Of a stretch of DNA of 64,000 nt, positions 4,244-48,325 are shown piece by piece (the first letter of the stretch is position 1; each line of letters opens with the position of its first letter). The DNA lies in assembly GCA_037447605.1 (NCBI GenBank), contig CM074815.1:2542001-2606000 (forward strand), given 5' to 3'. The stretch comes from Zygnema circumcarinatum SAG 698-1b (lineage: Eukaryota > Plantae > Zygnematophyceae). The position numbers were made by a program, and so were the translations under genes. Below the pieces are notes generated by a model. The model did not search any database. It saw nothing but the letters and a program-made list of their open reading frames with translations, and had not been told where the DNA came from.

Positions 4244-6115
4244 GAGAAAGGGAGGGAGAAAGAGAGAGAGGGAGGGAGAGAGAGAGAGGGGAAACCTTCT
4301 GAGCAATTTCAAGGTAACATTTTTCGGCCGTATCTGCTGCATTTGACAAACGCAACGACTGGAAAAATGGAATGATTTCTTCTTGTCGGAACATCCCCGT
4401 GAACTCCTTCCTGAGTGTGGTCAAAATCACAAGCATCAAGTCATCCCATTCGTCAGAAGAGTTCAGTAAGAAAAACGACGTTTTTTCTTTTGGTGAAATG
4501 AATGCGAAAGTTTTGGGAAATGATTTCTAGGCGGATAATAAAATAATAAAATTCCATAGTTGGACTCTACTTGAGTTTCAGAAATGGGCTGGTGGTGTCC
4601 TCTCGCCGCACATATGGCAGTCCCGTTTTCGCGCCATAACCCAAATGGTCGCAAATCACCTATTGCAGCCCATAAACACAGGAACGAGTAAAAGAAAAAA
4701 AAATGCCCATAGAAATCTCTGCAGAAAGATAGCATTTAGCTGATCTTTTCAATCTTTTTCTGTCATAGATTACTACTTACTTTAACCTGTCTTTCATAAT
4801 CTGTCCAAATATGTAAAGAATTTTACCTTACAGCACCATCCCGCCCACATGTCATCGTGAATTCCCATCGTTTTGGAGTCCCCCATGGGTGGAAAGTACA
4901 TAGCAGCTCCGATGAGCTCTCGGTCGAAGGCAAGGTTCAGAGAAGACATGGGGAACAAGCAACCCTAACGGAGGACACATGCCCCAAATCAGTTACTCAG
5001 TTTCAATTTTTTTCAATTGTTACAGCTGCTGCTGGATGGCTTTTTTCTGGAAGGGTTCACATACATGAATTGGAACCTGATTTGAGAATAAGATTCTATA
5101 AAAGAAATCACTTTAGAACTCACCCTTGGAACCGTCATAACTGCGTCAACGTAACGGAGGTTTCTTTGTGAAGGGCGGACCAGTTGCGTGGCAGCGTCAT
5201 AGTCCGGAACATTGAGCCATAATCCATGTGATATTACCGTCGGTGTGCCCTCTCGGAGACTAAGGAAAAAACGCAAGGAAAGTTAACCCCCACTCGAGCC
5301 CCCATTTCACTTCCAGCCCAATTCTTCAAAAACATTCAGTATACTAAATTTTGCTTTCCTTCTAAAAAAACTATGTGAAGATTAAGGGACACGCATAAGG
5401 TCAAACGAGGTCAAACTGGTTTGTGATACCTGAAGGGATACCCTCTCACAAAGTCACATGAGCTCCGAAAGGGATCGTAAAGAGTGTTGAAAAAGAAAGG
5501 TGTTGCTGGCGAGGACAGGTTCACTGCATGCTGCTGCAGGGCGTTGACTTTCTCTCCTTTGCGCGGATGTTTTGCGGGAAAGCAATCATTATTAAGAGTT
5601 ATAATGTACCGCTTCTGTGAAAATAGCCATCCAGCACACCGACATGCGCTGCAAAACGCCAGAAAATGCCGAAAGAATGGCACACATGATCAAGAACTGC
5701 TAAAACCCTAAAAAAAGCAACTCGACAAATCAAAACTAAAGCAAAGCAATTGCAGTTTATCAACGCCTTCTTTATACGTCACTGATACGCGAGTGAATAT
5801 AACGCTTAGGAAGGTTTTTTTTCTGAACCTTGCTTGAGAGGGAATGCAGCTTGCGCGAGACCCAAGGTCCGAGATGATGTTGGCCATGGTCACCACCTCG
5901 TAGTCGAACCCTTGCGGCACGCTCACAGGGAACGCGGGCCGAGAGGGGGACTCCGCCGCGCCTGCTTGAACGATTATGAGGTGGTAGGGTTGCAGGAAGG
6001 GTCGCCAGTCTTCAAGGAAGGAGAGGTTGTCTCCCCTTGCATTCGCACTAATCACAACGTCGGTATCGGCCGGGGAAGCAACAATAGCCTCGTCGTCGTC
6101 TGGAATTGTGGCCAT
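3817..6115 (-). CDS. RGP: Reversibly glycosylated polypeptide / UDP-arabinopyranose mutase family (GT75) protein with DxD replaced by NND; 7 exons
   Basis: Spliced translation gives [123 protein letters not shown]. These are collinear with plant RGP/UAM proteins. Stop TAG at 3819-3817. Confidence 0.93.
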
Positions 6116-6379
6116 TAGGGAGTTTGAACTGTGGCAGAATGCTGGTTTCTGCCTATACTTTGAGCTGGCAGGAGGAGAGGAAGGAGATGGAGGGAGAGGG
6201 GTTACAGGAGGAGAATCCTGGAAAGATAATTTATCAAAAGTATATGGAAGGGTTTTCAATTCTTCTAAGGAATAAAGGAGAAAAGGAAGAAAGCAAGTGG
6301 GTAGACAGGACCGAGCGGCTCTGGGAGAGAGTGCGGACTGTGAAGCCGGGGAAGGGGAGGGGTTGATGTGACGGAATGT

Positions 6380-6552
6380 CGCGTGACGTGACGTAGACGG
6401 AGCCGCATGCATCAAAATATAGGACAGCTTAAAAAACGGTGTCATGAACGAATAAGGAGGTGCCACGTGGAACAATGATACACGTGGCAGCAGCTGGACG
6501 GGTTCCTTGATTCCTCCTGAAGCATCGCCCAATGGGAACTCGCCACGTTGGC
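6380..6552. promoter_or_regulatory. ACGT-core (G-box/ABRE-like) cluster upstream of RGP-like gene
   Basis: TGACGTGACGT (~6384), GCCACGTGG (~6462), ACACGTGGCAG (~6480) and GCCACGTTGGC (~6542) lie 270-430 bp upstream of the ATG at 6115. Function is inferred from motif only. Confidence 0.4.
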
Positions 6553-7258
6553 AAGGAGTGACAATAGCCCATTCGAGAATGCACTATGTCATGGCACAAT
6601 GGCGCGATGCACAAGATCAATGCCAGATCCAATCCCATTGCCTCCACTAAGCTCGAATATGGAGGGCCCAACAGGGCACATGTCAGACTTTAAAGTAGAA
6701 CTTAAGGAAACAAATCTGAAACCAAAATGAGTACTCAGACATCGCGATCTTGCTGCAGAAGTGTTCTCCGTCTAAATTACGTTTCCAGTTTTACTGCATC
6801 AACCTGTTCCGTCCAGTTTAAACTGGAATCTGGTCGAACTGGCGCATGGAACGGGTTCTTGGAGCCGTCAAATTCGGTTGGCTGTCAAAAATAGACAGCG
6901 ACGTGGACGTCATGTCCGTACGGTACGGCCAACCGTTAGCAGCACGACACGTTTCGAATACTGTGTGGCGGACTGCTGAGACTTCCAAGCCAGCCACGTG
7001 GCAGTTTCCTCACCACAAAACTCTGCCCCCTCGGGTCCAGCCGTTCCTGCGCCTGGTACAGCGAATATTTCGCTCTGTCGTGTAGCGAGATTCTCTGTCG
7101 TGTATCGCGGAGCGTGCGCATCCCAGGCCATGCGAGCGGAGATCTCCGGATCTTGCGCATGTGGAAATGAATGCGTTCCCGCGCACTGCTGGCGGCTGCC
7201 GGAGGACACGTGTTCGGAAGGGAGGGTCTCCGGCTGCAAGATCCTCTTGTCGTCTACT

Positions 7259-10425: not shown

Positions 10426-18213
<7,788 letters not shown>

Positions 18214-23461: not shown

Positions 23462-26400
23462 TCAGCGCCTCTTCTGCGTCTTTTTTCGACGGCCGTTTTC
23501 TGCTATTTGGAAGCACTCCCCGCAGTAGTCCAGAACCTCTCCCAGAGTGGCCATCCTCTTTTTCGTAAAATTCCACGGAATTTCTATGCAGTAGTTCCCG
23601 CTCGCGTTGTATTCCTCGCGTTCAAAGACCGCTCGAACCACATCGTCATACACTTCTTCTCCGTACTCCGTCTTCAACTGAAGCAGTTCCACGTTGCCGC
23701 TATCGACAACTCTCTACAAAAAAAAAAAAAAAAAAGGGGGGGAGGGGGAGAAAAAGTAAAAAAATAAAAGTCAACAAATTTCAACACATTTTTTTCAGGA
23801 GGTTGAATCTTACGTTTATTCAAAGTCAATTTCTTTTTTGAAATAAGGATTTCAGGATTAACCTTTTCTTTGCCGTTTTCTAAAATTGTTTTCAACGGCA
23901 TAAAATGTGGGAATGCGATCTTATCCTGCCACTTGGACAGAAGCTTAGCGCACTCTTCCTCCGATTTTCCCCTCTTCTCGAACTCACTCATCCACTTTTT
24001 CGCATTCAAATCCGCGGTCAAATACAAGCCGATTTTAGTCGACGTTTCAGTCATAAGATTCTTGACACAGTTTTTTCGAAGGACCTGAAATACAAATAAA
24101 AAAAAATAATAAAAAATTAGAAATTCTTTTTCACATTAAACAACACAAGTCACATCGTTCTTTGAATTGACTTTCCCATTCTGTGCCTATCCAACTTCTC
24201 ATCCCACCTTCCTAAAAGCGCACGCACGCACACACAAAAGAGAGAGATACATATGATTGACTTAATAAGATGTGTAAGTGATGATTTAACTCATGTCGAT
24301 TGATGATATCAGACACGACAAAAGGCATTGATGACGTCTATATGATATGATGATAACATCATGTAAAAAAAGAAAATGAAAAGAGAAACAAATTTACATG
24401 ACATCATTAACATATGACCTACATCATACAAACATCATCAATGCCCTTCGTCGTGTCTGACATCATCAATCAACATGAGCTAAATCACCACTTGGCATCC
24501 TAAACCAATCACACATCTCACATCTCTCTCACTCTTTAACTCTCTATCTCTTTTAAATCACTGATAACATCAACAACATCATCACCATAAAGACTATTTC
24601 ACTCACCTTTATAGCAGATTTCCTGCCTTCAACTACCTCAATGTTGAGTTCTCGTTCTGTTTTACTCAAATAATTATTTTGCATCCTCAAGTCCTCTACC
24701 TCGTCCTCTGCTCCTTCTTGAGCCTCCCGCTCCCTCCGCTGGGACTCTTCCAAATCAGACCTCAATTTCTGAATCCTTTCTTCCATATTTCTTTTCTCTG
24801 CCTGCGTTTGGTTTCAAAAAATGAAAAAACCTACGGGATTGAGAACGGAAAAAAAAAGCATTGAAATTTGTTTTTGAATAAGACTAACCACAAAATGGAA
24901 ACTCGAGAAAAGTACCAAAAAAAAAAGCAATCACCTCATGTTTTTCTGCCAGCAGGGCCCGACTCTCCTCCAATCGCTGCCTCTTGTTCCGCTCTTCGCC
25001 CTCCTAAACGCGACGATGCGAAAACCAAATGCACACACAACTGTCCATTAGAATATCGTATTTTCGGGCCAACCCCCCCTCCTCCCCTCCCTTTCCCTCC
25101 CCCTTCGCCCTCCCCTCTTCACCTACCCCCTCACTCCTCCCCCCCCACTCTCCTCCTTTCCCCCCTGCCCATCGCTCCCCTTCCCTCCCACCTCCCTTCC
25201 TTCCCTCCCACCTCCCCACCTACCCTCTCCTTCCTCCATATAAACCTTCCTCACCCTCTCGTTTCCCCTCCTCCCCCATCCGCCCCCCCATTCCTTTACC
25301 CGTCCCTCTCCCATTCCCCCTCCCTCTCCCCCCCCCCTCCTCCCCCCTCTTCCTCTCCTTGCGCAGCCCGCGGCGCACCTCTCTCTTCGCCGCCGCTTCA
25401 ATCTTTAGAAGATCTGACCCCCGCCCTCAAAGAAATGTGTTACCACTCACATGAAAATAAATTACGTAAGACTATCTGAAAAAAATGTACAGATTCTCTC
25501 TCTCTCTCTCTCTCTCTCTCGCTCTCTCTGCACCCACCCTCTTCATGTGTCTTCTTCACCGCCTCCAGCCGTAGATTTGCGCGCTGCCTCTCGTATTCTT
25601 CAGCCTAGATGCCACACATTCTAAAGAAAAATTAAACTCACCTTCTCTCACTCTCACACTCTCTCTCTCTCATACACATACGCACACCTCCCCACGCGCG
25701 AGCGCAAAGCAAAAACAAAAAAATCTTTCACCTTTGTCTCATTATCAGTTGCTATAGCTACCCCTCTCCTCCTTCAACTCTCTCCCCGTCCAAATTCTCT
25801 CTCCCCCCCCCCTCCCCCCCGCCCTCCCCTCTCTCCACATCTCACCCGCTCTCTCATCTACTAGCAGAACTCTCACCTCAGAAAATGTTTTAGTGCACGT
25901 ATGCTTCTGAAAATAATTCTTTAAACTTGGCGGCCAACGGGATGCTTTTGGATTCCCACTCCCATCAAAAGGCAGCGTCTTTTCGCTCTGCATGTCGGCC
26001 TTTGTGACCAGCCACGCATAAAAATCCTTTCTAGTCTCGGAATAGTTTAAAAACCAATCCTGTCGTCCATGCCCGTCTTGCTTAAAGGATTTTTCCAACA
26101 TCTCAGCTTGCAATCCCATAGCCTCTTCACCGAATATTACGAGACCCACACCTGTATGGCCGTCCCGATCTGACCAAAAAAGACAAATTCTTTTTATCAA
26201 ATTTTTACACCAAAAAGTTCTCCCTTAATCCACCTCACCTGCACAACTTTTCTCTCTTCACACTCACTCGTCCTATTTAAGGCACCCTCCCTCCCTCCCT
26301 CCCTCCTTCCCCCTCCCCNNNNNNNNNNTCCCTCCCTCCCTCCCTCCCTCCCTCCCTCCGAACCAGCCTCACCATAGAAGACCCGCGCTTCGCGCACATG

Positions 26401-26615: not shown

Positions 26616-27587
26616 AAAGAACAGCGAGTAGAGAGGAAGCAAACCAAGCAGCGGTGAGGTGAAATGGGTCACAAAAAGAATATGAACACACTTCCAAACA
26701 AAAAAATGGATAAGAAAGACGGAACTGATTCTAAAATATGGACACTACGGACGTCACAAGGAGGAACTTTTCCCCCTCCCTCCTCCCCCGCCCCTCCCCT
26801 TCCTCCCTCCCCCCCCCCCTCCCTCCCCCTTCCCCCTTGTTACCTTCGTCACAGGCGGCACAGGCGGCAGCACTTCAATCGATTCCGCCTTCTCTTTCGA
26901 CTTCTGTTTGTCGTTTTCCGCCGCCGCCGCCTCGTAAATCGCCTTATGGACTCCGCGGGTTCGGGCGTCTCCATTGACTTGCCACGTGGCCCGGGCGTGC
27001 TCCAAGAGGTGCTGCAACTCGAATTCCTTTTTTAGTTTGCCTGCGGCAGAAAAAAATAAGTAAGGAGAATGAAAAAACCGCAGAAAAAAAGAGTAAGCAA
27101 AACAAAAATAACGAAATTGTAAATAAGAAAAAGTAAGGGGCTCATCGCTCTCTCTTTTCTCTCTATCTCTCTCTCTCTCTCTCGCTTTCTCTCTCTCTCC
27201 CTCTCTCTTTCTCTTTTCTTCATACTTCCATTAGTTCTGCTGATTCAAAAAACATAAATAGGGAGAGGGAGCGAAGAGCGAGGGAGAGAGGGAATCAGCG
27301 GAAGCATTCGAAAGGAAGTATTAAGGAGAGAGAAAAACGGTGAGAGAGACAAGCGGGAAGAAAATTGAAAACTTAAATCCTTTTAACATTCAACAACATG
27401 AAAATCTGAAAATAAAGCGAGCCATAATATTTCTATCTAGTAGCTTACCTGTACATGCTGGACATCGGTAGTTTCCGTTTGCCCACTTGATGCCTTCCGC
27501 TTTAATCTGCTCCTTCATCTTCTTGCAGGCCTCCTCCTCTTCCTCCTCCTCGAATGGAAGATCGTCAAAGTATGTAATGTCCTCCAT
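23462..27587 (-). CDS. zf-XS / XS / coiled-coil / XH protein (IDN2/FDM family, RNA-directed DNA methylation factor-like)
   Basis: zf-XS: YRCPACTG|KLKKEFELQHLLEHA..RGVHKAIYE. XS: YAWPWKAMV..GHTGVGLVIF..SFKQDGHGRQDW..FYAWLVTKAD. Glu/Arg-rich coil exons follow. XH: IGLYLTADLNAKKW..WQDKIAFPHFMPLK..LKTEYGEEVYDDVVRAVFEREEYNASGNYCIEIPWNFTKKRMATLGEV. Stop TGA at 23464-23462. Confidence 0.88.
24276..24493 (-). ncRNA. Candidate intronic hairpin RNA (pre-miRNA/hp-siRNA-like) in the IDN2/FDM-like intron 24085-24606
   Basis: Arms 24276-24348 and 24421-24493 give 63 Watson-Crick pairs plus 10 mismatches, all G:U in the minus-strand transcript. There is an inner 9-bp stem (24360-24368/24393-24401) and a U-rich loop. 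Expression is not shown. Confidence 0.5.
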
Positions 27588-44781: not shown

Positions 44782-45595
44782 GAATTTTTTTTTCTTTTTT
44801 AATTTGTAAAGGTCCATCTGAGAAATATCTTTCCATCCACCCTCGCGCCTTCCTTTCATTTTGTTCAATGATCAAATTCGCATTTTTATATTCACTGAGT
44901 TTTGAGGGAGAAGGAGAAGGCGACACGTGTCCAACCCGAGTCCATGGTCGACAGTTCCACAGTTCTACAGTTAAACTGAACAGCACAATTAGTAAGCCAT
45001 CTTTACTTCAGTATACAAACACATGTGCCAGTTTAACGGGAGCGTTAACGGAACAAACCCGCCTTTCTATTTGAGCCCGTATCTGATACAAATACGAAAA
45101 TATCTAACAACCCTAATCCCTTAAATCCTAATTTATAATCCTAGAAGGCCTACGACCGTTAAAGGAACCGCCAAACACTACCAATTGGCACGGCAGCCAA
45201 CCGTTGGCACCTCTGGGACCGTCGAGACCGTTAGGACCGGCGGTTCTCGGTGGACCCTGCCAAAACCCGTTCACACGTGTAGCGATTGGCTTATTGGCTA
45301 AGGTCAAGCCCGCCGGCCCAAGGCCGCTAGGTGTACGGTCGATCGGATCTTCCAGATCTGTCTTTTGGACTTTTGGGACTCCTGATTGGCGGAAGGAATT
45401 AAGGGCTGACAATGCGACGCTACATGAGGGGCTTATTTTTTGTCCGATTGTGATATCCGTTTCATTTTGACGTTTATGCTTGACAGCATCTGCGCAAAAT
45501 CTGCGCCGTACAGATGCTATTTCAGTTTTCCTAAACTAATGTAGATATCAAATTTAGATATTATATTTGGAATTATTTTACGAAAGTACTATTTA

Positions 45596-46511
45596 CAGTA
45601 GGGGGTGTCAGACTTAACAAAATCTTACGAAAAGCGTTACGAAAAAAAAGGTTACGAAAGTACTCCGCCTCAGCAGGATCGCGATTATACTGGAGTACTC
45701 GTTCTGATGTCAAACTTACGAACACGCGTACTGAAATTTTTTAAGTCTGACACCCCCTAGTGTCCTTTTTCTGAAAAGAGTCACGTTTTCGCCGGGCAGC
45801 TTGTACAAAGGATGTTTTAGCGAAATATGCTGTTTCATACTTTTCAGAATAGATACAGACCGTTTTTCGTCGGGTGTACGGATGGTGATTTGAATGTACG
45901 AAGCGCGCGCGTCTACAAGGTATAAGGGCGCAACACGTGGAGTGACATGATTGGTCGCGGCAACAAATGACGTGACAAGTATGTTTGGGACCGTGACGTG
46001 ACGAAACGAGCCGCGAAAAAAAGGGTCCGCGGAATCAGTTTCTCAGTTTTAATTCCCGCCATTTCCGACTGCCGTCCGTGGACCCCTTTTTTCGCGTCTC
46101 GTTTCGTCACGTCACGGACCCAAACATACTTGTCACGTCATATGTTGCCGCGACCAATCATATCACTCCACGTGTTGCGCCCTTATACCTTGTAGACGCG
46201 CGCGCTTTGTACATTCAAATCACCATCCGTACACCCGACGAAAAACGTCTGTATCTATTCTGAAAAGTATGAAACAGCATATTTCGCTAAAACATCCTTT
46301 GTACAAGCTGCCCGGCGAAAACGTGACTGTTTTCAGAAAAAGGACACTAGGGGGTGTCAGACTTAAAAAATTTCAGTACGCGTGTTCGTAAGTTTGACAT
46401 CAGAACGAATACTCCAGTATGATCGCGATCCTCCTGCGGCGGAGTACTTTCGTAACCTTTTTTTTCGTAACGCTTTTCGTAAGATTTTGTTAAGTCTGAC
46501 ACCCCCTACTG
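45596..46511. mobile_element. 916-bp foldback (palindromic) element, arms ~438 bp, 41-bp spacer, each arm starting with a 167-bp self-inverted module
   Basis: 45596-46033 is the reverse complement of 46075-46511 with few mismatches. Ends are TA|CAGTAGGGGGTGTCAGACTTAA..TTAAGTCTGACACCCCCTACTG|TG. Noncoding. Confidence 0.85.
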
Positions 46512-47294
46512 TGAATAGAACTTTCCTTATTTTATCGCAAGATGGAGGAACCACGAGGAACCGGTCGTAAAAACGATAGTCTAGAACGAGTAACTCTAAA
46601 ATCTGAAAACTAGGGCGAGATATTTCAATAGCACCGTACGCGTTTCGTTTGCACATTTGTCGACGTTTTCCGTATACCGCTCAATTCAATTTCTTTTTCG
46701 GAAAGACCAGACATCAAATTATTTTGGTCGATCACAGATCCCGTGGCGTTTGAGAAACTTTATCATGTGTTCACTTCGCGACAGTATAAAGCTGTATGAA
46801 CGATAGAAAAGACAAATTACCGTACAACTTGACAATTGTCCAGAACTGAAACATCTTATATTTCGTACAAATCATTGAATGAGTTGAAACCCACTGAGGC
46901 CATCGGTCAATCGTTCAATCAGGGCGCACCTCAAACGATCTCAGCCAATCAAAGCAGCCCTAAAATTACTATTAAAAAATAAAATCAGTTCAAAATTGCT
47001 CTGTCGATTGGATGTACGGCAGACCAGATACAGGTGCTCGGGCGGCAACACCTGTCCCGCCATTTTCGGCGTCATCTGCTGCCGTACCATACGGAGACGC
47101 ACGTACTGTACAAATCTTTCGCTTGGATTTATTCGCTTTGTCATAAACCGCCAGTCCGTCGAGCTTCCACCAATCGTACGGTTTTGTCCATTTGTAACCG
47201 CTTCAGCAGCTGATCCAACCGTCATCAACTGCCATGCCGACGTCATTCTCGTACAAAGTGCCGCCTCGGATCCCGAAGAGCTGCAGCGTTCGTA

Positions 47295-47461
47295 CAGTAG
47301 GGGGTGTCAGACTTAACAAAATCTTACGAAAAGCGTTACGAAAAAAAAGGTTACGAAAGTACTCCGCCGCAGAAGGATCGCTATTATACTGGAGTACTCG
47401 TTCTGATGTCAAACTTACGAACACGCGTACTGAAATTTTTTAAGTCTGACACCCCCTAGTG
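47295..47461 (+). mobile_element. Solo 167-bp MITE-like module (third copy)
   Basis: Near-identical to 45596-45762. It has a 19-bp perfect internal inverted repeat, TAGGGGGTGTCAGACTTAA. Confidence 0.85.
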
Positions 47462-48325
47462 GCCATGTCTTGTACATTTCCTGACGTAAGCTGTTTCAGA
47501 TGCCGTCATCACCATACCTCGCGCATCCAGCGTGCTTTTGAACGCTGGATAGAACAGTCCATCACATGTAGCGGCCCAAAATCCGGCAGTTTTATTGGCT
47601 TGACGACGTCATGTCGTACCTGCTCTATGTCATTCTTTGCTATATGACGTCATCATTGCCGTAGTTGCCCGCGCCAAACTTGGGAAATATTTGGATAGGA
47701 TATTTGATCGACCAATCAGCAGTCGCCAATCGTCCATGTTGACTCAAATTTGTCGTCTAGTTCAATTCTGTCGGTTCATGCGCGGCCGCCGCCGTCGCCC
47801 ATCTCTCAAAAAAGTTTCAAAAAAATGACAAAAAAAAGAATTATGACCATAGATAATGTTTTCAGAAAATTTCAATTTGACATGGTCGACCAAGAATGGA
47901 ATATTTTCAGTACAAACTTTTTTTCTCGGTCCCTCAGATGACATTCCAAATAAAAGTACGGTGATTTTTTAACATTGAATTGCTTTTTGCGTATATTCGT
48001 TCCGTAGATCCGCTTCTGAACATCAAAATAAAAGACATTTCTGGTCCCTCAGGCGGCATTGAAACTTTCAACACCTCCAGGAAAAAAATTGAAATTTTTG
48101 GATCCGACTTCGAAAGAAAGAATTTTTTTCTTGACAATTTCTCTTTTCGCTTTGCAGACGTTTCCAGTTCCAGTATCAGTAAAATGGTCCAGCTGGCAGA
48201 TTTTGTCGCAAGTGCACTTCACATGGCGACAAAGCCCCGACAGCACAACCGACAAAAACTCCCGCTTGGCCGCACCGATTGGCATCAAAATTGAAGTCCA
48301 CGCCTCCGCAACGTGCCAAACAGGA

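What the first reader, a model, noticed from the sequence alone, without database searches (positions are those of the whole stretch)
24276..24493. Intronic hairpin in an IDN2/FDM-like gene: 73-bp stem with 10/10 mismatches G:U in the sense RNA
Seen: 24276-24348 pairs with 24421-24493. All 10 non-WC positions (24281, 24289, 24297, 24308, 24320, 24323, 24335, 24338, 24340, 24347) are C/A or A/C on the + strand, so they are G:U on the minus (transcribed) strand. The stem is therefore gapless only in the pre-mRNA orientation. If direction were random, 10/10 is about 1 in 500 (2 x 0.5^10). Known: XS domains bind dsRNA, and silencing genes can carry autoregulatory intronic hairpins (MIR838 in Arabidopsis DCL1). 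Inference: a pre-miRNA/hp-siRNA or feedback element in an RNA-silencing gene. The alternative is strand-biased C->T deamination of an old MITE on the non-template strand.
Basis: partly seen in the sequence, partly recalled or inferred. Interest (0 to 1): 0.78.

Follow-up and report, generated by a model that had tools for sequence, protein, structure and literature searches.

The report
Wobble-only RNA hairpin in IDN2-like intron
An intron of an alga's RNA-silencing gene holds a long inverted repeat whose two halves differ only by changes that keep the gene's own RNA paired, so it is a credible but unproven source of small regulatory RNAs.

Summary
Arms 24276-24348 and 24421-24493 form a gapless 73-bp inverted repeat. 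All 10 differences are A/C on the + strand, which is G:U in the minus-strand RNA. There are no transversions and no indels.

The repeat lies in a canonical GT..AG intron (24085-24606, minus strand) of an intact XS+XH (IDN2/FDM-like) gene. An angiosperm homologue has an intron at the same position, without a hairpin. In sense RNA the duplex extends to about 125 bp. The intron folds at -206 kcal/mol in sense and -128 in antisense.

A 470-bp fold-back 20 kb away has mixed mismatches and many transversions. The host gene's four-fold codon sites show no sense-strand C->T excess. The window's large GC skew disappears once low-complexity DNA is masked. These controls weaken, but do not exclude, a purely mutational origin.

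No other copy occurs in the window, there is no target-site duplication, and no Rfam family is reached. I could not reach small-RNA data, transcripts or close relatives, so function is inferred.

Best reading (0.45): a locally born hairpin kept paired at the RNA level, probably a Dicer substrate. The scan noted two similar one-strand-wobble hairpins on other DNA of this genome.

The parts
24085..24606 (-). Intron holding the hairpin (522 nt). It lies between the last coiled-coil exon and the first XH exon.
   Evidence: GTGAGT at 24606 and TTTCAG ending at 24085, read on the minus strand. Both flanking exons are in phase 0. The position matches an exon boundary of an angiosperm homologue, at P0001 residue ~367.
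24421..24493 (-). 5' arm of the core stem in the sense RNA. It is G-rich and C-poor (G22, C7), like the surrounding intron.
24276..24348 (-). 3' arm of the core stem in the sense RNA. It is the C-richer arm (G10, C15) and carries 7 of the 10 wobble U.
24349..24420 (-). Apical part. An inner 18-bp helix (24349-24367 with 24393-24419) has 4 G:U and one 9-nt bulge. The terminal loop is 25 nt and U-rich (24368-24392).
   Evidence: MFE pair list. The duplex beats shuffles, 2 of 2000 reaching it. A neutral DNA alignment here also shows one opposite-polarity transition and one transversion.
24496..24535 (-). 5' strand of the outer helix extension. It pairs with 24236-24272.
   Evidence: 34 pairs, 8 of them G:U, with three bulges or internal loops. 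Sense duplex -30.4 kcal/mol, reached by 1 of 2000 shuffles; antisense -20.6. A DNA alignment that penalises transitions does not recover it.
24236..24272 (-). 3' strand of the outer helix extension.
24607..24801 (-). Upstream exon (coiled-coil part, 65 codons).
   Evidence: Open frame, acceptor ...AAACGCAG, donor AAG|GTGAGT.
23863..24084 (-). Downstream exon, first half of the XH domain (74 codons).
   Evidence: Pfam XH profile positions 6-57. tblastn to P0001 residues 360-439.
23465..23713 (-). Last coding exon, second half of the XH domain, followed by the stop codon.
   Evidence: Pfam XH profile positions 66-123, E 5.2e-16.
25877..26169 (-). Exon with the C-terminal part of the XS domain.
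   Evidence: Pfam XS profile positions 45-112, E 1.4e-11. Splice sites were read.

Best explanation
A segment of an ancient intron of an IDN2/FDM-like gene was duplicated in inverted orientation in this algal lineage. The G-rich 5' arm looks like the original and the C-richer 3' arm like the inverted copy.

Because the repeat lies inside the transcription unit, every pre-mRNA (or the excised intron) carries a dsRNA of 73 uninterrupted base pairs, about 125 bp with its outer and inner helices. Since the duplication, the arms have changed only at positions where the change leaves a G:U pair in the sense RNA. This is what purifying selection on RNA pairing would leave.

The most likely use of such a duplex in a Dicer-containing streptophyte is as a Dicer-like substrate giving hairpin siRNAs or a proto-miRNA. 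Dicing of the unspliced transcript would compete with splicing, and so would tie the output of this silencing gene to Dicer activity.

Shown here: the structure, the strand polarity, the intron setting, the intact host gene, single copy in the window, and the lack of a comparable bias in controls. Inferred: selection, dicing and feedback.
For: - All 10 differences are sense-strand wobbles, with no transversion and no indel in 73 bp. Binomial p = 0.002; the joint probability with the transition requirement is 2e-6 to 2e-4.
- The control fold-back in the same window (45567-46540) has about 4 G/T-type, about 4 A/C-type and at least 8 transversion-type mismatches. Fisher test against the hairpin: p = 2e-4.
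- Four-fold sites of the host exons are strand-symmetric: C33/T30 against G52/A44, p = 0.87. There is therefore no gene-wide sense C->T pressure.
- After masking low complexity the window's GC skew is about 0. The two + strand genes have sense G+T of 0.51-0.52.
- The sense fold is 78 kcal/mol better than the antisense fold. The outer helix is significant in sense.
- It is the only multi-wobble gapless stem in 64 kb.
- The host intron position is shared with an angiosperm homologue whose intron has no hairpin, so the hairpin is a lineage-specific addition.
- G:U-containing hairpin RNAs are still diced and active in plants, and they escape the self-silencing of perfect inverted-repeat DNA (PMC9263138).
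- Streptophyte algae encode DCL and AGO proteins (PMC7994812).
- Precedents exist: MIR838 in AtDCL1 and miR1047 in PpDCL1 (PMC4429486).
Against: - No small-RNA, RNA-seq, degradome or methylation data could be examined.
- No orthologue or second strain was available, so there is no compensatory change and no test of conservation.
- Constraint over a whole 73-bp stem is stronger than is usual for young hairpin-siRNA or MIRNA loci, which normally collect bulges.
- All six introns of the host gene are G+T-rich on the sense strand (0.55-0.68). The hairpin's own flanks are very C-poor, with 14 C against 60 G in 222 nt. Some local process or constraint therefore pushes in the same direction as the wobbles. 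With asymmetries estimated from those flanks (my arithmetic), 10 of 10 would have a probability of about 0.03-0.15, before counting the missing transversions.
- The inner helix does hold one opposite-polarity transition and one transversion.
- The finding was picked because of its bias, so multiple testing across the genome applies.
Confidence: 0.45

Rival explanations
1. The inverted repeat is neutral and shaped by strand-asymmetric mutation. It has no RNA function. Cytosines of the non-template (sense) DNA strand deaminate faster, for example while displaced in transcription bubbles or R-loops, which the very G-rich sense strand of this gene's introns would favour. G:C pairs therefore decay to G:U-type differences only.
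For: - The sense strand of all six host introns is G+T-rich (0.55-0.68). Four of them have GC skew of +0.36 to +0.82.
- The hairpin flanks hold 14 C against 60 G.
- The fraction of presumed ancestral C converted is the same in both arms: 7 of 22 and 3 of 10.
- The contexts are not CpG-specific: 3 CG, 2 CHG, 5 CHH. This fits unspecific deamination.
- Two other hairpins with one-strand wobble bias were noted in transcribed DNA of this genome (unchecked notes).
Against: - Four-fold degenerate sites of the same gene show no C/T against G/A asymmetry (p = 0.87).
- Introns I_d and I_f of the same gene have C >= G on the sense strand.
- Introns of the + strand histidine-kinase gene include C-rich ones.
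- After masking there is no strand skew in the window.
- This reading needs sense C->T to outrun all other substitutions and indels by roughly 45-fold per site. That figure is my arithmetic: 10 of 32 C changed against 0 of 146 other changes.
- A displaced sense strand would itself fold into the hairpin and shield the stem cytosines.
Confidence: 0.28
2. The hairpin is a selected RNA structure that is not a small-RNA precursor. It could be a splicing modulator that shortens the effective intron from 522 to about 220 nt. It could also be a binding site for a dsRNA-binding protein, possibly the XS-domain product of the gene itself.
For: - The same wobble-only pattern and sense-strand stability apply.
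- Uniform constraint over the whole stem fits a structural role better than a 21-nt duplex does.
- From established knowledge, not tested here: XS domains are reported to bind dsRNA.
Against: - Other introns of the gene of 133-534 nt need no such helper.
- A 73-125-bp near-perfect duplex is expected to be diced in any cell with Dicer-like enzymes (PMC7994812).
- No conserved counterpart exists in the homologous angiosperm intron.
Confidence: 0.1
3. The hairpin is a relic of a miniature inverted-repeat transposon (MITE) that landed in the intron, and the bias is incidental.
For: - It is a compact fold-back with long terminal inverted repeats and a short A/T-rich centre.
- A sub-threshold Rfam match to MIR4371, a long-hairpin plant miRNA family: 63.9 bits, E 1.9e-14.
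Against: - There is no second copy of either arm in 64 kb.
- No direct repeat flanks either the core (24275/24494) or the extended stem (24235/24536).
- The arm sequence shares its ATCATC/TGATGA-type motifs with the adjoining intron and the loop, which suggests a local duplication.
- The Rfam score is far below the gathering score of 110. The unrelated control fold-back gets an equal score (64 bits) against another long-hairpin family, MIR8643. The match is therefore generic.
Confidence: 0.05

Closest known systems
MIR838 in intron 14 of Arabidopsis DCL1 and miR1047 in intron 7 of Physcomitrium DCL1 (PMC4429486)
   Same: A hairpin sits in an intron of an RNA-silencing gene, on the sense strand. 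Its excision competes with production of functional mRNA. Such hairpins arose independently in different lineages.
   Different: Those are short, imperfect miRNA stem-loops with sequenced small RNAs, and the host is the enzyme that cuts them. Here the stem is 73-125 bp and near-perfect, the host is an XS/XH (IDN2-like) protein, and no small RNA has been seen.
Hairpin-siRNA and proto-MIRNA loci born by inverted duplication (the inverted-duplication model of MIRNA origin and Arabidopsis IR71-type loci; recalled from established knowledge, not retrieved here)
   Same: A single-copy long inverted repeat is transcribed by Pol II into a near-perfect dsRNA. It is the expected substrate of several Dicer-like enzymes.
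   Different: No donor or target gene for the arms was found in the window. Known young loci drift and collect mismatches and bulges, whereas this core stem carries wobbles only.
Engineered G:U hairpin RNA transgenes (PMC9263138)
   Same: C-to-T changes on the sense strand break the DNA palindrome but keep a fully paired RNA. About 14% of core pairs are G:U here, against 18-26% in the constructs.
   Different: The constructs convert every C of one arm by design. Here the changes are scattered over both arms and arose naturally. Whether they protect the locus from self-silencing is unknown.
MITE-derived long-hairpin miRNA families (e.g. Rfam MIR4371, RF04276)
   Same: Long, almost perfect stem-loop of about 160-190 nt.
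   Different: The score of 63.9 is below the gathering score of 110. There is no dispersed copy and no target-site duplication. An unrelated fold-back scores the same against another such family.

Membership tests
Hairpin small-RNA locus (hp-siRNA / MIRNA) | A stem-loop formed by a single transcript strand | tested here: met
   73 bp gapless, about 125 bp with extensions. Sense MFE -206.2 kcal/mol, z -16.
Hairpin small-RNA locus (hp-siRNA / MIRNA) | The hairpin strand is transcribed | tested here: inconclusive
   It lies inside a canonical intron of an intact gene on the same strand. No transcript of this gene could be retrieved.
Hairpin small-RNA locus (hp-siRNA / MIRNA) | 20-24-nt small RNAs map to the stem (for a MIRNA, one precise miRNA/miRNA* duplex with 2-nt overhangs) | not testable with these tools
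Hairpin small-RNA locus (hp-siRNA / MIRNA) | Dependence on a Dicer-like enzyme | not testable with these tools
   There is only literature that streptophyte algae encode DCLs (PMC7994812). The species of this window was not identified.
Rfam MIR4371 (RF04276) | Score at or above the family's gathering score (110 bits) | tested here: not met
   63.9 bits. No hit at gathering thresholds in the whole window. The control fold-back scores 64 bits against MIR8643.
MITE | Terminal inverted repeats | tested here: met
MITE | Target-site duplication flanking the element | tested here: not met
   The flanks are ...GATGTGT|AAGTG and CACTT|GGCATCC at the core, and ...CACAAA|AGAGAG and CACTC|TTTAAC at the extended stem. 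No direct repeat is present.
MITE | Many dispersed copies in the genome | tested here: inconclusive
   No other copy in the 64-kb window. The rest of the genome could not be searched. A metagenome pattern scan found 0 matches.
IDN2/FDM (XS-XH) protein family (host gene) | XS domain | tested here: met
   PF03468, E 1.4e-11, 45.1 bits against a cut-off of 25.
IDN2/FDM (XS-XH) protein family (host gene) | XH domain at the C-terminus | tested here: met
   PF03469, E 5.2e-16 on the last exon and E 1.6e-4 on the preceding exon. Best database relatives are land-plant IDN2/FDM proteins at 38-55% identity.
IDN2/FDM (XS-XH) protein family (host gene) | N-terminal zf-XS zinc finger | tested here: inconclusive
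   The ORF 27390-27587 contains ...YRCPACTGK... but gave no Pfam hit at E <= 0.01.
IDN2/FDM (XS-XH) protein family (host gene) | Central coiled coil | tested here: inconclusive
   Exons 25539-25604, 24935-25003 and 24607-24801 translate to Glu/Arg/Lys-rich heptad-like sequence. No coiled-coil predictor was run.

The most novel reading that the evidence does not exclude
The wobble-only pattern may be a mutational footprint of strand-specific RNA-directed DNA methylation. Every siRNA cut from a hairpin has the sequence of the sense strand. In plant RdDM the methyltransferase is proposed to act on the 'siRNA-like' DNA strand (PMC5204349). Hairpin siRNAs would therefore methylate only sense-strand cytosines of both arms, in all sequence contexts, and deamination of 5-methylcytosine would then convert G:C to G:U-type pairs on that strand alone.

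This would explain four things: the polarity, the mixed CG/CHG/CHH contexts, the equal hit rate per cytosine in both arms, and the recurrence of such hairpins in this genome. It would mean that a streptophyte alga has siRNA-guided, strand-specific cytosine methylation, with the evolutionary record of it written in an intron of an RdDM-type gene.
Probability: 0.1. Interest if true: 0.85.

Novelty: new member of a known kind. Interest (0 to 1): 0.5.

Why it matters

A long hairpin kept paired in the sense RNA, inside an intron of an IDN2/FDM-like gene, is a concrete and cheap-to-test candidate for two things. One is an endogenous Dicer substrate. The other is a feedback loop on a silencing gene that arose independently of the DCL1 cases known in land plants.

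The same one-strand wobble signature was noted at two other transcribed hairpins of this genome. Together they point to one of two explanations. Either there is a class of selected hairpin RNAs, or there is a strong strand-specific cytosine-to-thymine process acting on transcribed or siRNA-targeted DNA. Either would be worth knowing, and a single small-RNA plus methylome data set would separate them.

Tried and rejected
1. Orthologous-intron comparison could not be done.
- The word search with the XH exon found nothing.
- The full HMMER search gave land-plant proteins at 46-55% identity at best.
- A profile made of one full-length homologue plus the exons as separate rows returned only angiosperm IDN2/FDM proteins.
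- Exact look-ups of two window ORFs were not on record, and P0005 was not on record.
Searches were made exon by exon by reference, so the full-length product of this gene was never used as a query.

2. A metagenome scan with a degenerate 35-nt arm pattern found 0 matches.

3. The Rfam match to MIR4371 looked exciting (E 1e-14). I rejected it as generic after the control fold-back gave an equal score against MIR8643.

4. The window-wide GC skew as evidence of a regional mutational bias was rejected. It comes from CT/GA and GGGA-type low complexity and vanishes after masking.

5. My first attempt to get intron composition by removing all ORFs of at least 50 aa left too little sequence. It was replaced by hand-read splice sites.

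6. A scan for GGT[AG]AGT donor sites gave only 7 sites, too few for a general statement.

7. A neutral DNA alignment does not recover the outer helix. Its extra 6-8 wobbles are therefore not counted as independent evidence.

8. The species was not identified. I ran no further search on that.
Full report
**Observation**

The + strand stretch 24276-24348 is the reverse complement of 24421-24493 over 73 positions, without gaps. Exactly ten positions do not form Watson-Crick pairs. The repeat finder finds the same pair.

Every difference is therefore a transition, and every one gives G:U when the minus strand is read as RNA and an A-C clash when the + strand is. If one also asks that all ten be transitions, the joint probability is between 2e-6 and 2e-4 for transition fractions of 0.5-0.8.

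The finding was selected for its bias, so these numbers must be discounted for the number of inverted repeats in the genome. They remain small.

**Setting**

The minus strand carries an intact gene. Its exons give Pfam XS (E 1.4e-11) and XH (E 5.2e-16 and 1.6e-4). Its best relatives in a 1.8-billion-protein library are land-plant IDN2/FDM proteins at 38-55% identity over the XH exon.

I read the splice sites directly. The hairpin intron runs from GTGAGT at 24606 to TTTCAG at 24085. Both neighbouring exons are in phase 0 and translate cleanly.

The downstream exon (23863-24084, 74 codons) corresponds to residues about 367-439 of a Macadamia homologue. Those residues are one exon there too. The intron position is therefore ancient. 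The angiosperm intron has no comparable repeat, so the hairpin is a lineage-specific addition.

All searches were made exon by exon by reference.

**Anatomy in RNA**

Folding the 522-nt intron gives -206.2 kcal/mol (z -16.2) for the sense strand and -128.4 (z -11.0) for the antisense strand. In the sense fold the duplex is longer than the core. It has four parts:
- an outer helix of 34 pairs (24496-24535 with 24236-24272), with 8 G:U and three bulges;
- the 73-bp core, with 10 G:U and no interruption;
- an inner helix of 18 pairs, with 4 G:U and one bulge;
- a 25-nt U-rich terminal loop.

The outer duplex beats 1999 of 2000 shuffles in sense. A DNA alignment blind to transition type does not recover it, so I do not count its wobbles as independent evidence. 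The inner part contains one opposite-polarity transition and one transversion.

**Origin**

No other copy of the arms exists in the 64-kb window. No direct repeat flanks the core or the extended stem.

The arms share ATCATC/TGATGA-type motifs with the loop and the adjoining intron. The 5' arm has the G-rich, C-poor composition of the surrounding intron, and the 3' arm has the complementary composition.

This fits a local inverted duplication better than a MITE insertion. The genome-wide copy number could not be checked.

**Is the polarity mutational?**

The window shows large negative GC skews. They come from CT/GA and GGGA-type low complexity: after masking, the skew is -0.02 for the window, and the sense G+T of two + strand genes is 0.51-0.52.

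A second, larger fold-back 20 kb away (45567-46540, about 470-bp arms) serves as an internal control. Its mismatches are about four G/T-type, about four A/C-type and at least eight transversion-type. This is significantly different from the hairpin (Fisher p = 2e-4). A regional or replication-linked bias is therefore unlikely.

For a transcription-linked bias I counted four-fold degenerate sites in 456 codons of the host gene. C/T is 33/30 and G/A is 52/44, which is symmetric.

On the other side, all six introns of the gene have a sense G+T of 0.55-0.68, and the hairpin's flanks hold 14 C against 60 G. Two short introns of the same gene have C >= G, and a + strand gene has C-rich introns.

Asymmetries estimated from the flanks alone would make 10 of 10 not very improbable, at about 0.03-0.15 by my arithmetic. 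Even then, the absence of any transversion or indel in 146 nt requires sense C->T to dominate all other change by more than an order of magnitude.

I conclude that a mutational explanation is weakened but alive. It is most plausible in the form of deamination of the displaced G-rich sense strand.

**Database matches**

No Rfam family reaches its gathering score anywhere in the window. In permissive mode the hairpin matches MIR4371 at 63.9 bits (gathering score 110). The unrelated control fold-back matches MIR8643 at 64 bits. These are generic long-hairpin scores, not homology.

**Relatives and expression**

The word search, the HMMER search, a profile search, exact-ORF look-ups and a metagenome pattern scan produced no sequence close enough for an intron comparison, and no transcript of this gene. 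No small-RNA data are reachable with these tools. The species was not identified. Earlier notes of the scan call it a streptophyte alga.

**Context from the scan and the literature**

Two other notes on other DNA of this genome describe hairpins with a one-strand G:U bias. One is a Ran-derived fold-back in a spliced non-coding transcript, which was followed up. The other is a 56-bp intronic hairpin. I could not check them. If they are right, the signature is recurrent.

The literature adds the following:
- Streptophyte algae encode DCL and AGO proteins, and their small RNAs are barely studied (PMC7994812).
- Hairpin RNAs in which all sense cytosines are replaced by thymines are still processed and active in plants, and they avoid the self-silencing that perfect inverted-repeat DNA attracts (PMC9263138).
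- Intronic hairpins that feed back on DCL1 arose independently in Arabidopsis (MIR838) and Physcomitrium (miR1047) (PMC4429486).
- In RdDM the methyltransferase is proposed to act on the siRNA-like DNA strand (PMC5204349). This suggests a hybrid reading in which hairpin siRNAs themselves cause sense-only cytosine loss. The mixed CG/CHG/CHH contexts of the presumed C->T changes are compatible with it.

**Verdict**

The hairpin is real, sense-specific, intronic and in an IDN2-like gene, and the pattern is best explained by maintenance of RNA pairing. A role as a small-RNA precursor or feedback element remains an inference (0.45).
- The main rival is neutral decay under strand-asymmetric C->T mutation (0.28).
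- The remaining readings are a non-Dicer structural role (0.10), a MITE relic (0.05) and the methylation-footprint reading (about 0.10, overlapping the first).
- This is a new member of a known kind, an intronic hairpin-RNA locus, of moderate interest until small-RNA data are examined.

Noticed in passing
window 45567-46540 and 47294-47464: A large fold-back with about 470-bp arms at 95-96% complementarity and a 41-nt centre. A third, partial copy of 171 nt lies 0.8 kb downstream in inverted orientation. It has no convincing ORF and its mismatch types are mixed. It is probably a fold-back or transposon-like element between the cpSRP54 gene and the next gene. I used it here only as a control.
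   Followed up: partly
window 25004-25537, 25606-25876, 26170-26371 (minus strand): Introns of the IDN2-like gene are filled with G-rich purine tracts (GGGA/GGAGG type) on the sense strand, with GC skew of +0.72 to +0.82. This composition is expected to favour R-loops or G-quadruplexes. A 10-N assembly gap (26319-26328) lies inside one of them.
   Followed up: partly
whole window: The strong strand skews in the raw composition profile (down to -0.66) come entirely from CT/GA microsatellites and other two-letter low complexity, about a quarter of the window. They are mostly oriented with the pyrimidine strand on +. After masking, GC skew is -0.02.
   Followed up: yes
L001 (Macadamia contig JAAEEG010000616.1) 3001-8266, protein P0001: The best-scoring XH relative is an angiosperm protein with two XH domains (residues about 441-502 and 655-723). 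They are encoded by a tandem duplication of the coiled-coil and XH exons. Several other top hits also show two matched stretches.
   Followed up: no
window 11374-15988 (+ strand): A multi-exon hybrid histidine-kinase gene with PAS, HisKA and HATPase_c Pfam hits, plus an unconfirmed receiver-like ORF at 15671-15988. It includes a 701-codon open frame with a long Ser/Pro/Leu-rich low-complexity start.
   Followed up: no
window 5711-6583 (- strand): An ORF with the N-terminal part of a reversibly glycosylated polypeptide (RGP / UDP-arabinopyranose mutase-like) domain, E 3.9e-11.
   Followed up: no
window 24566-24590 (minus strand), inside the hairpin intron: A small second stem-loop (UGAUGAUGUU...GAUGUUAUCA) is built from the same TGATGA-type motif as the main arms and is held together largely by G:U pairs. 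It may be a degenerate third copy of the arm motif.
   Followed up: no
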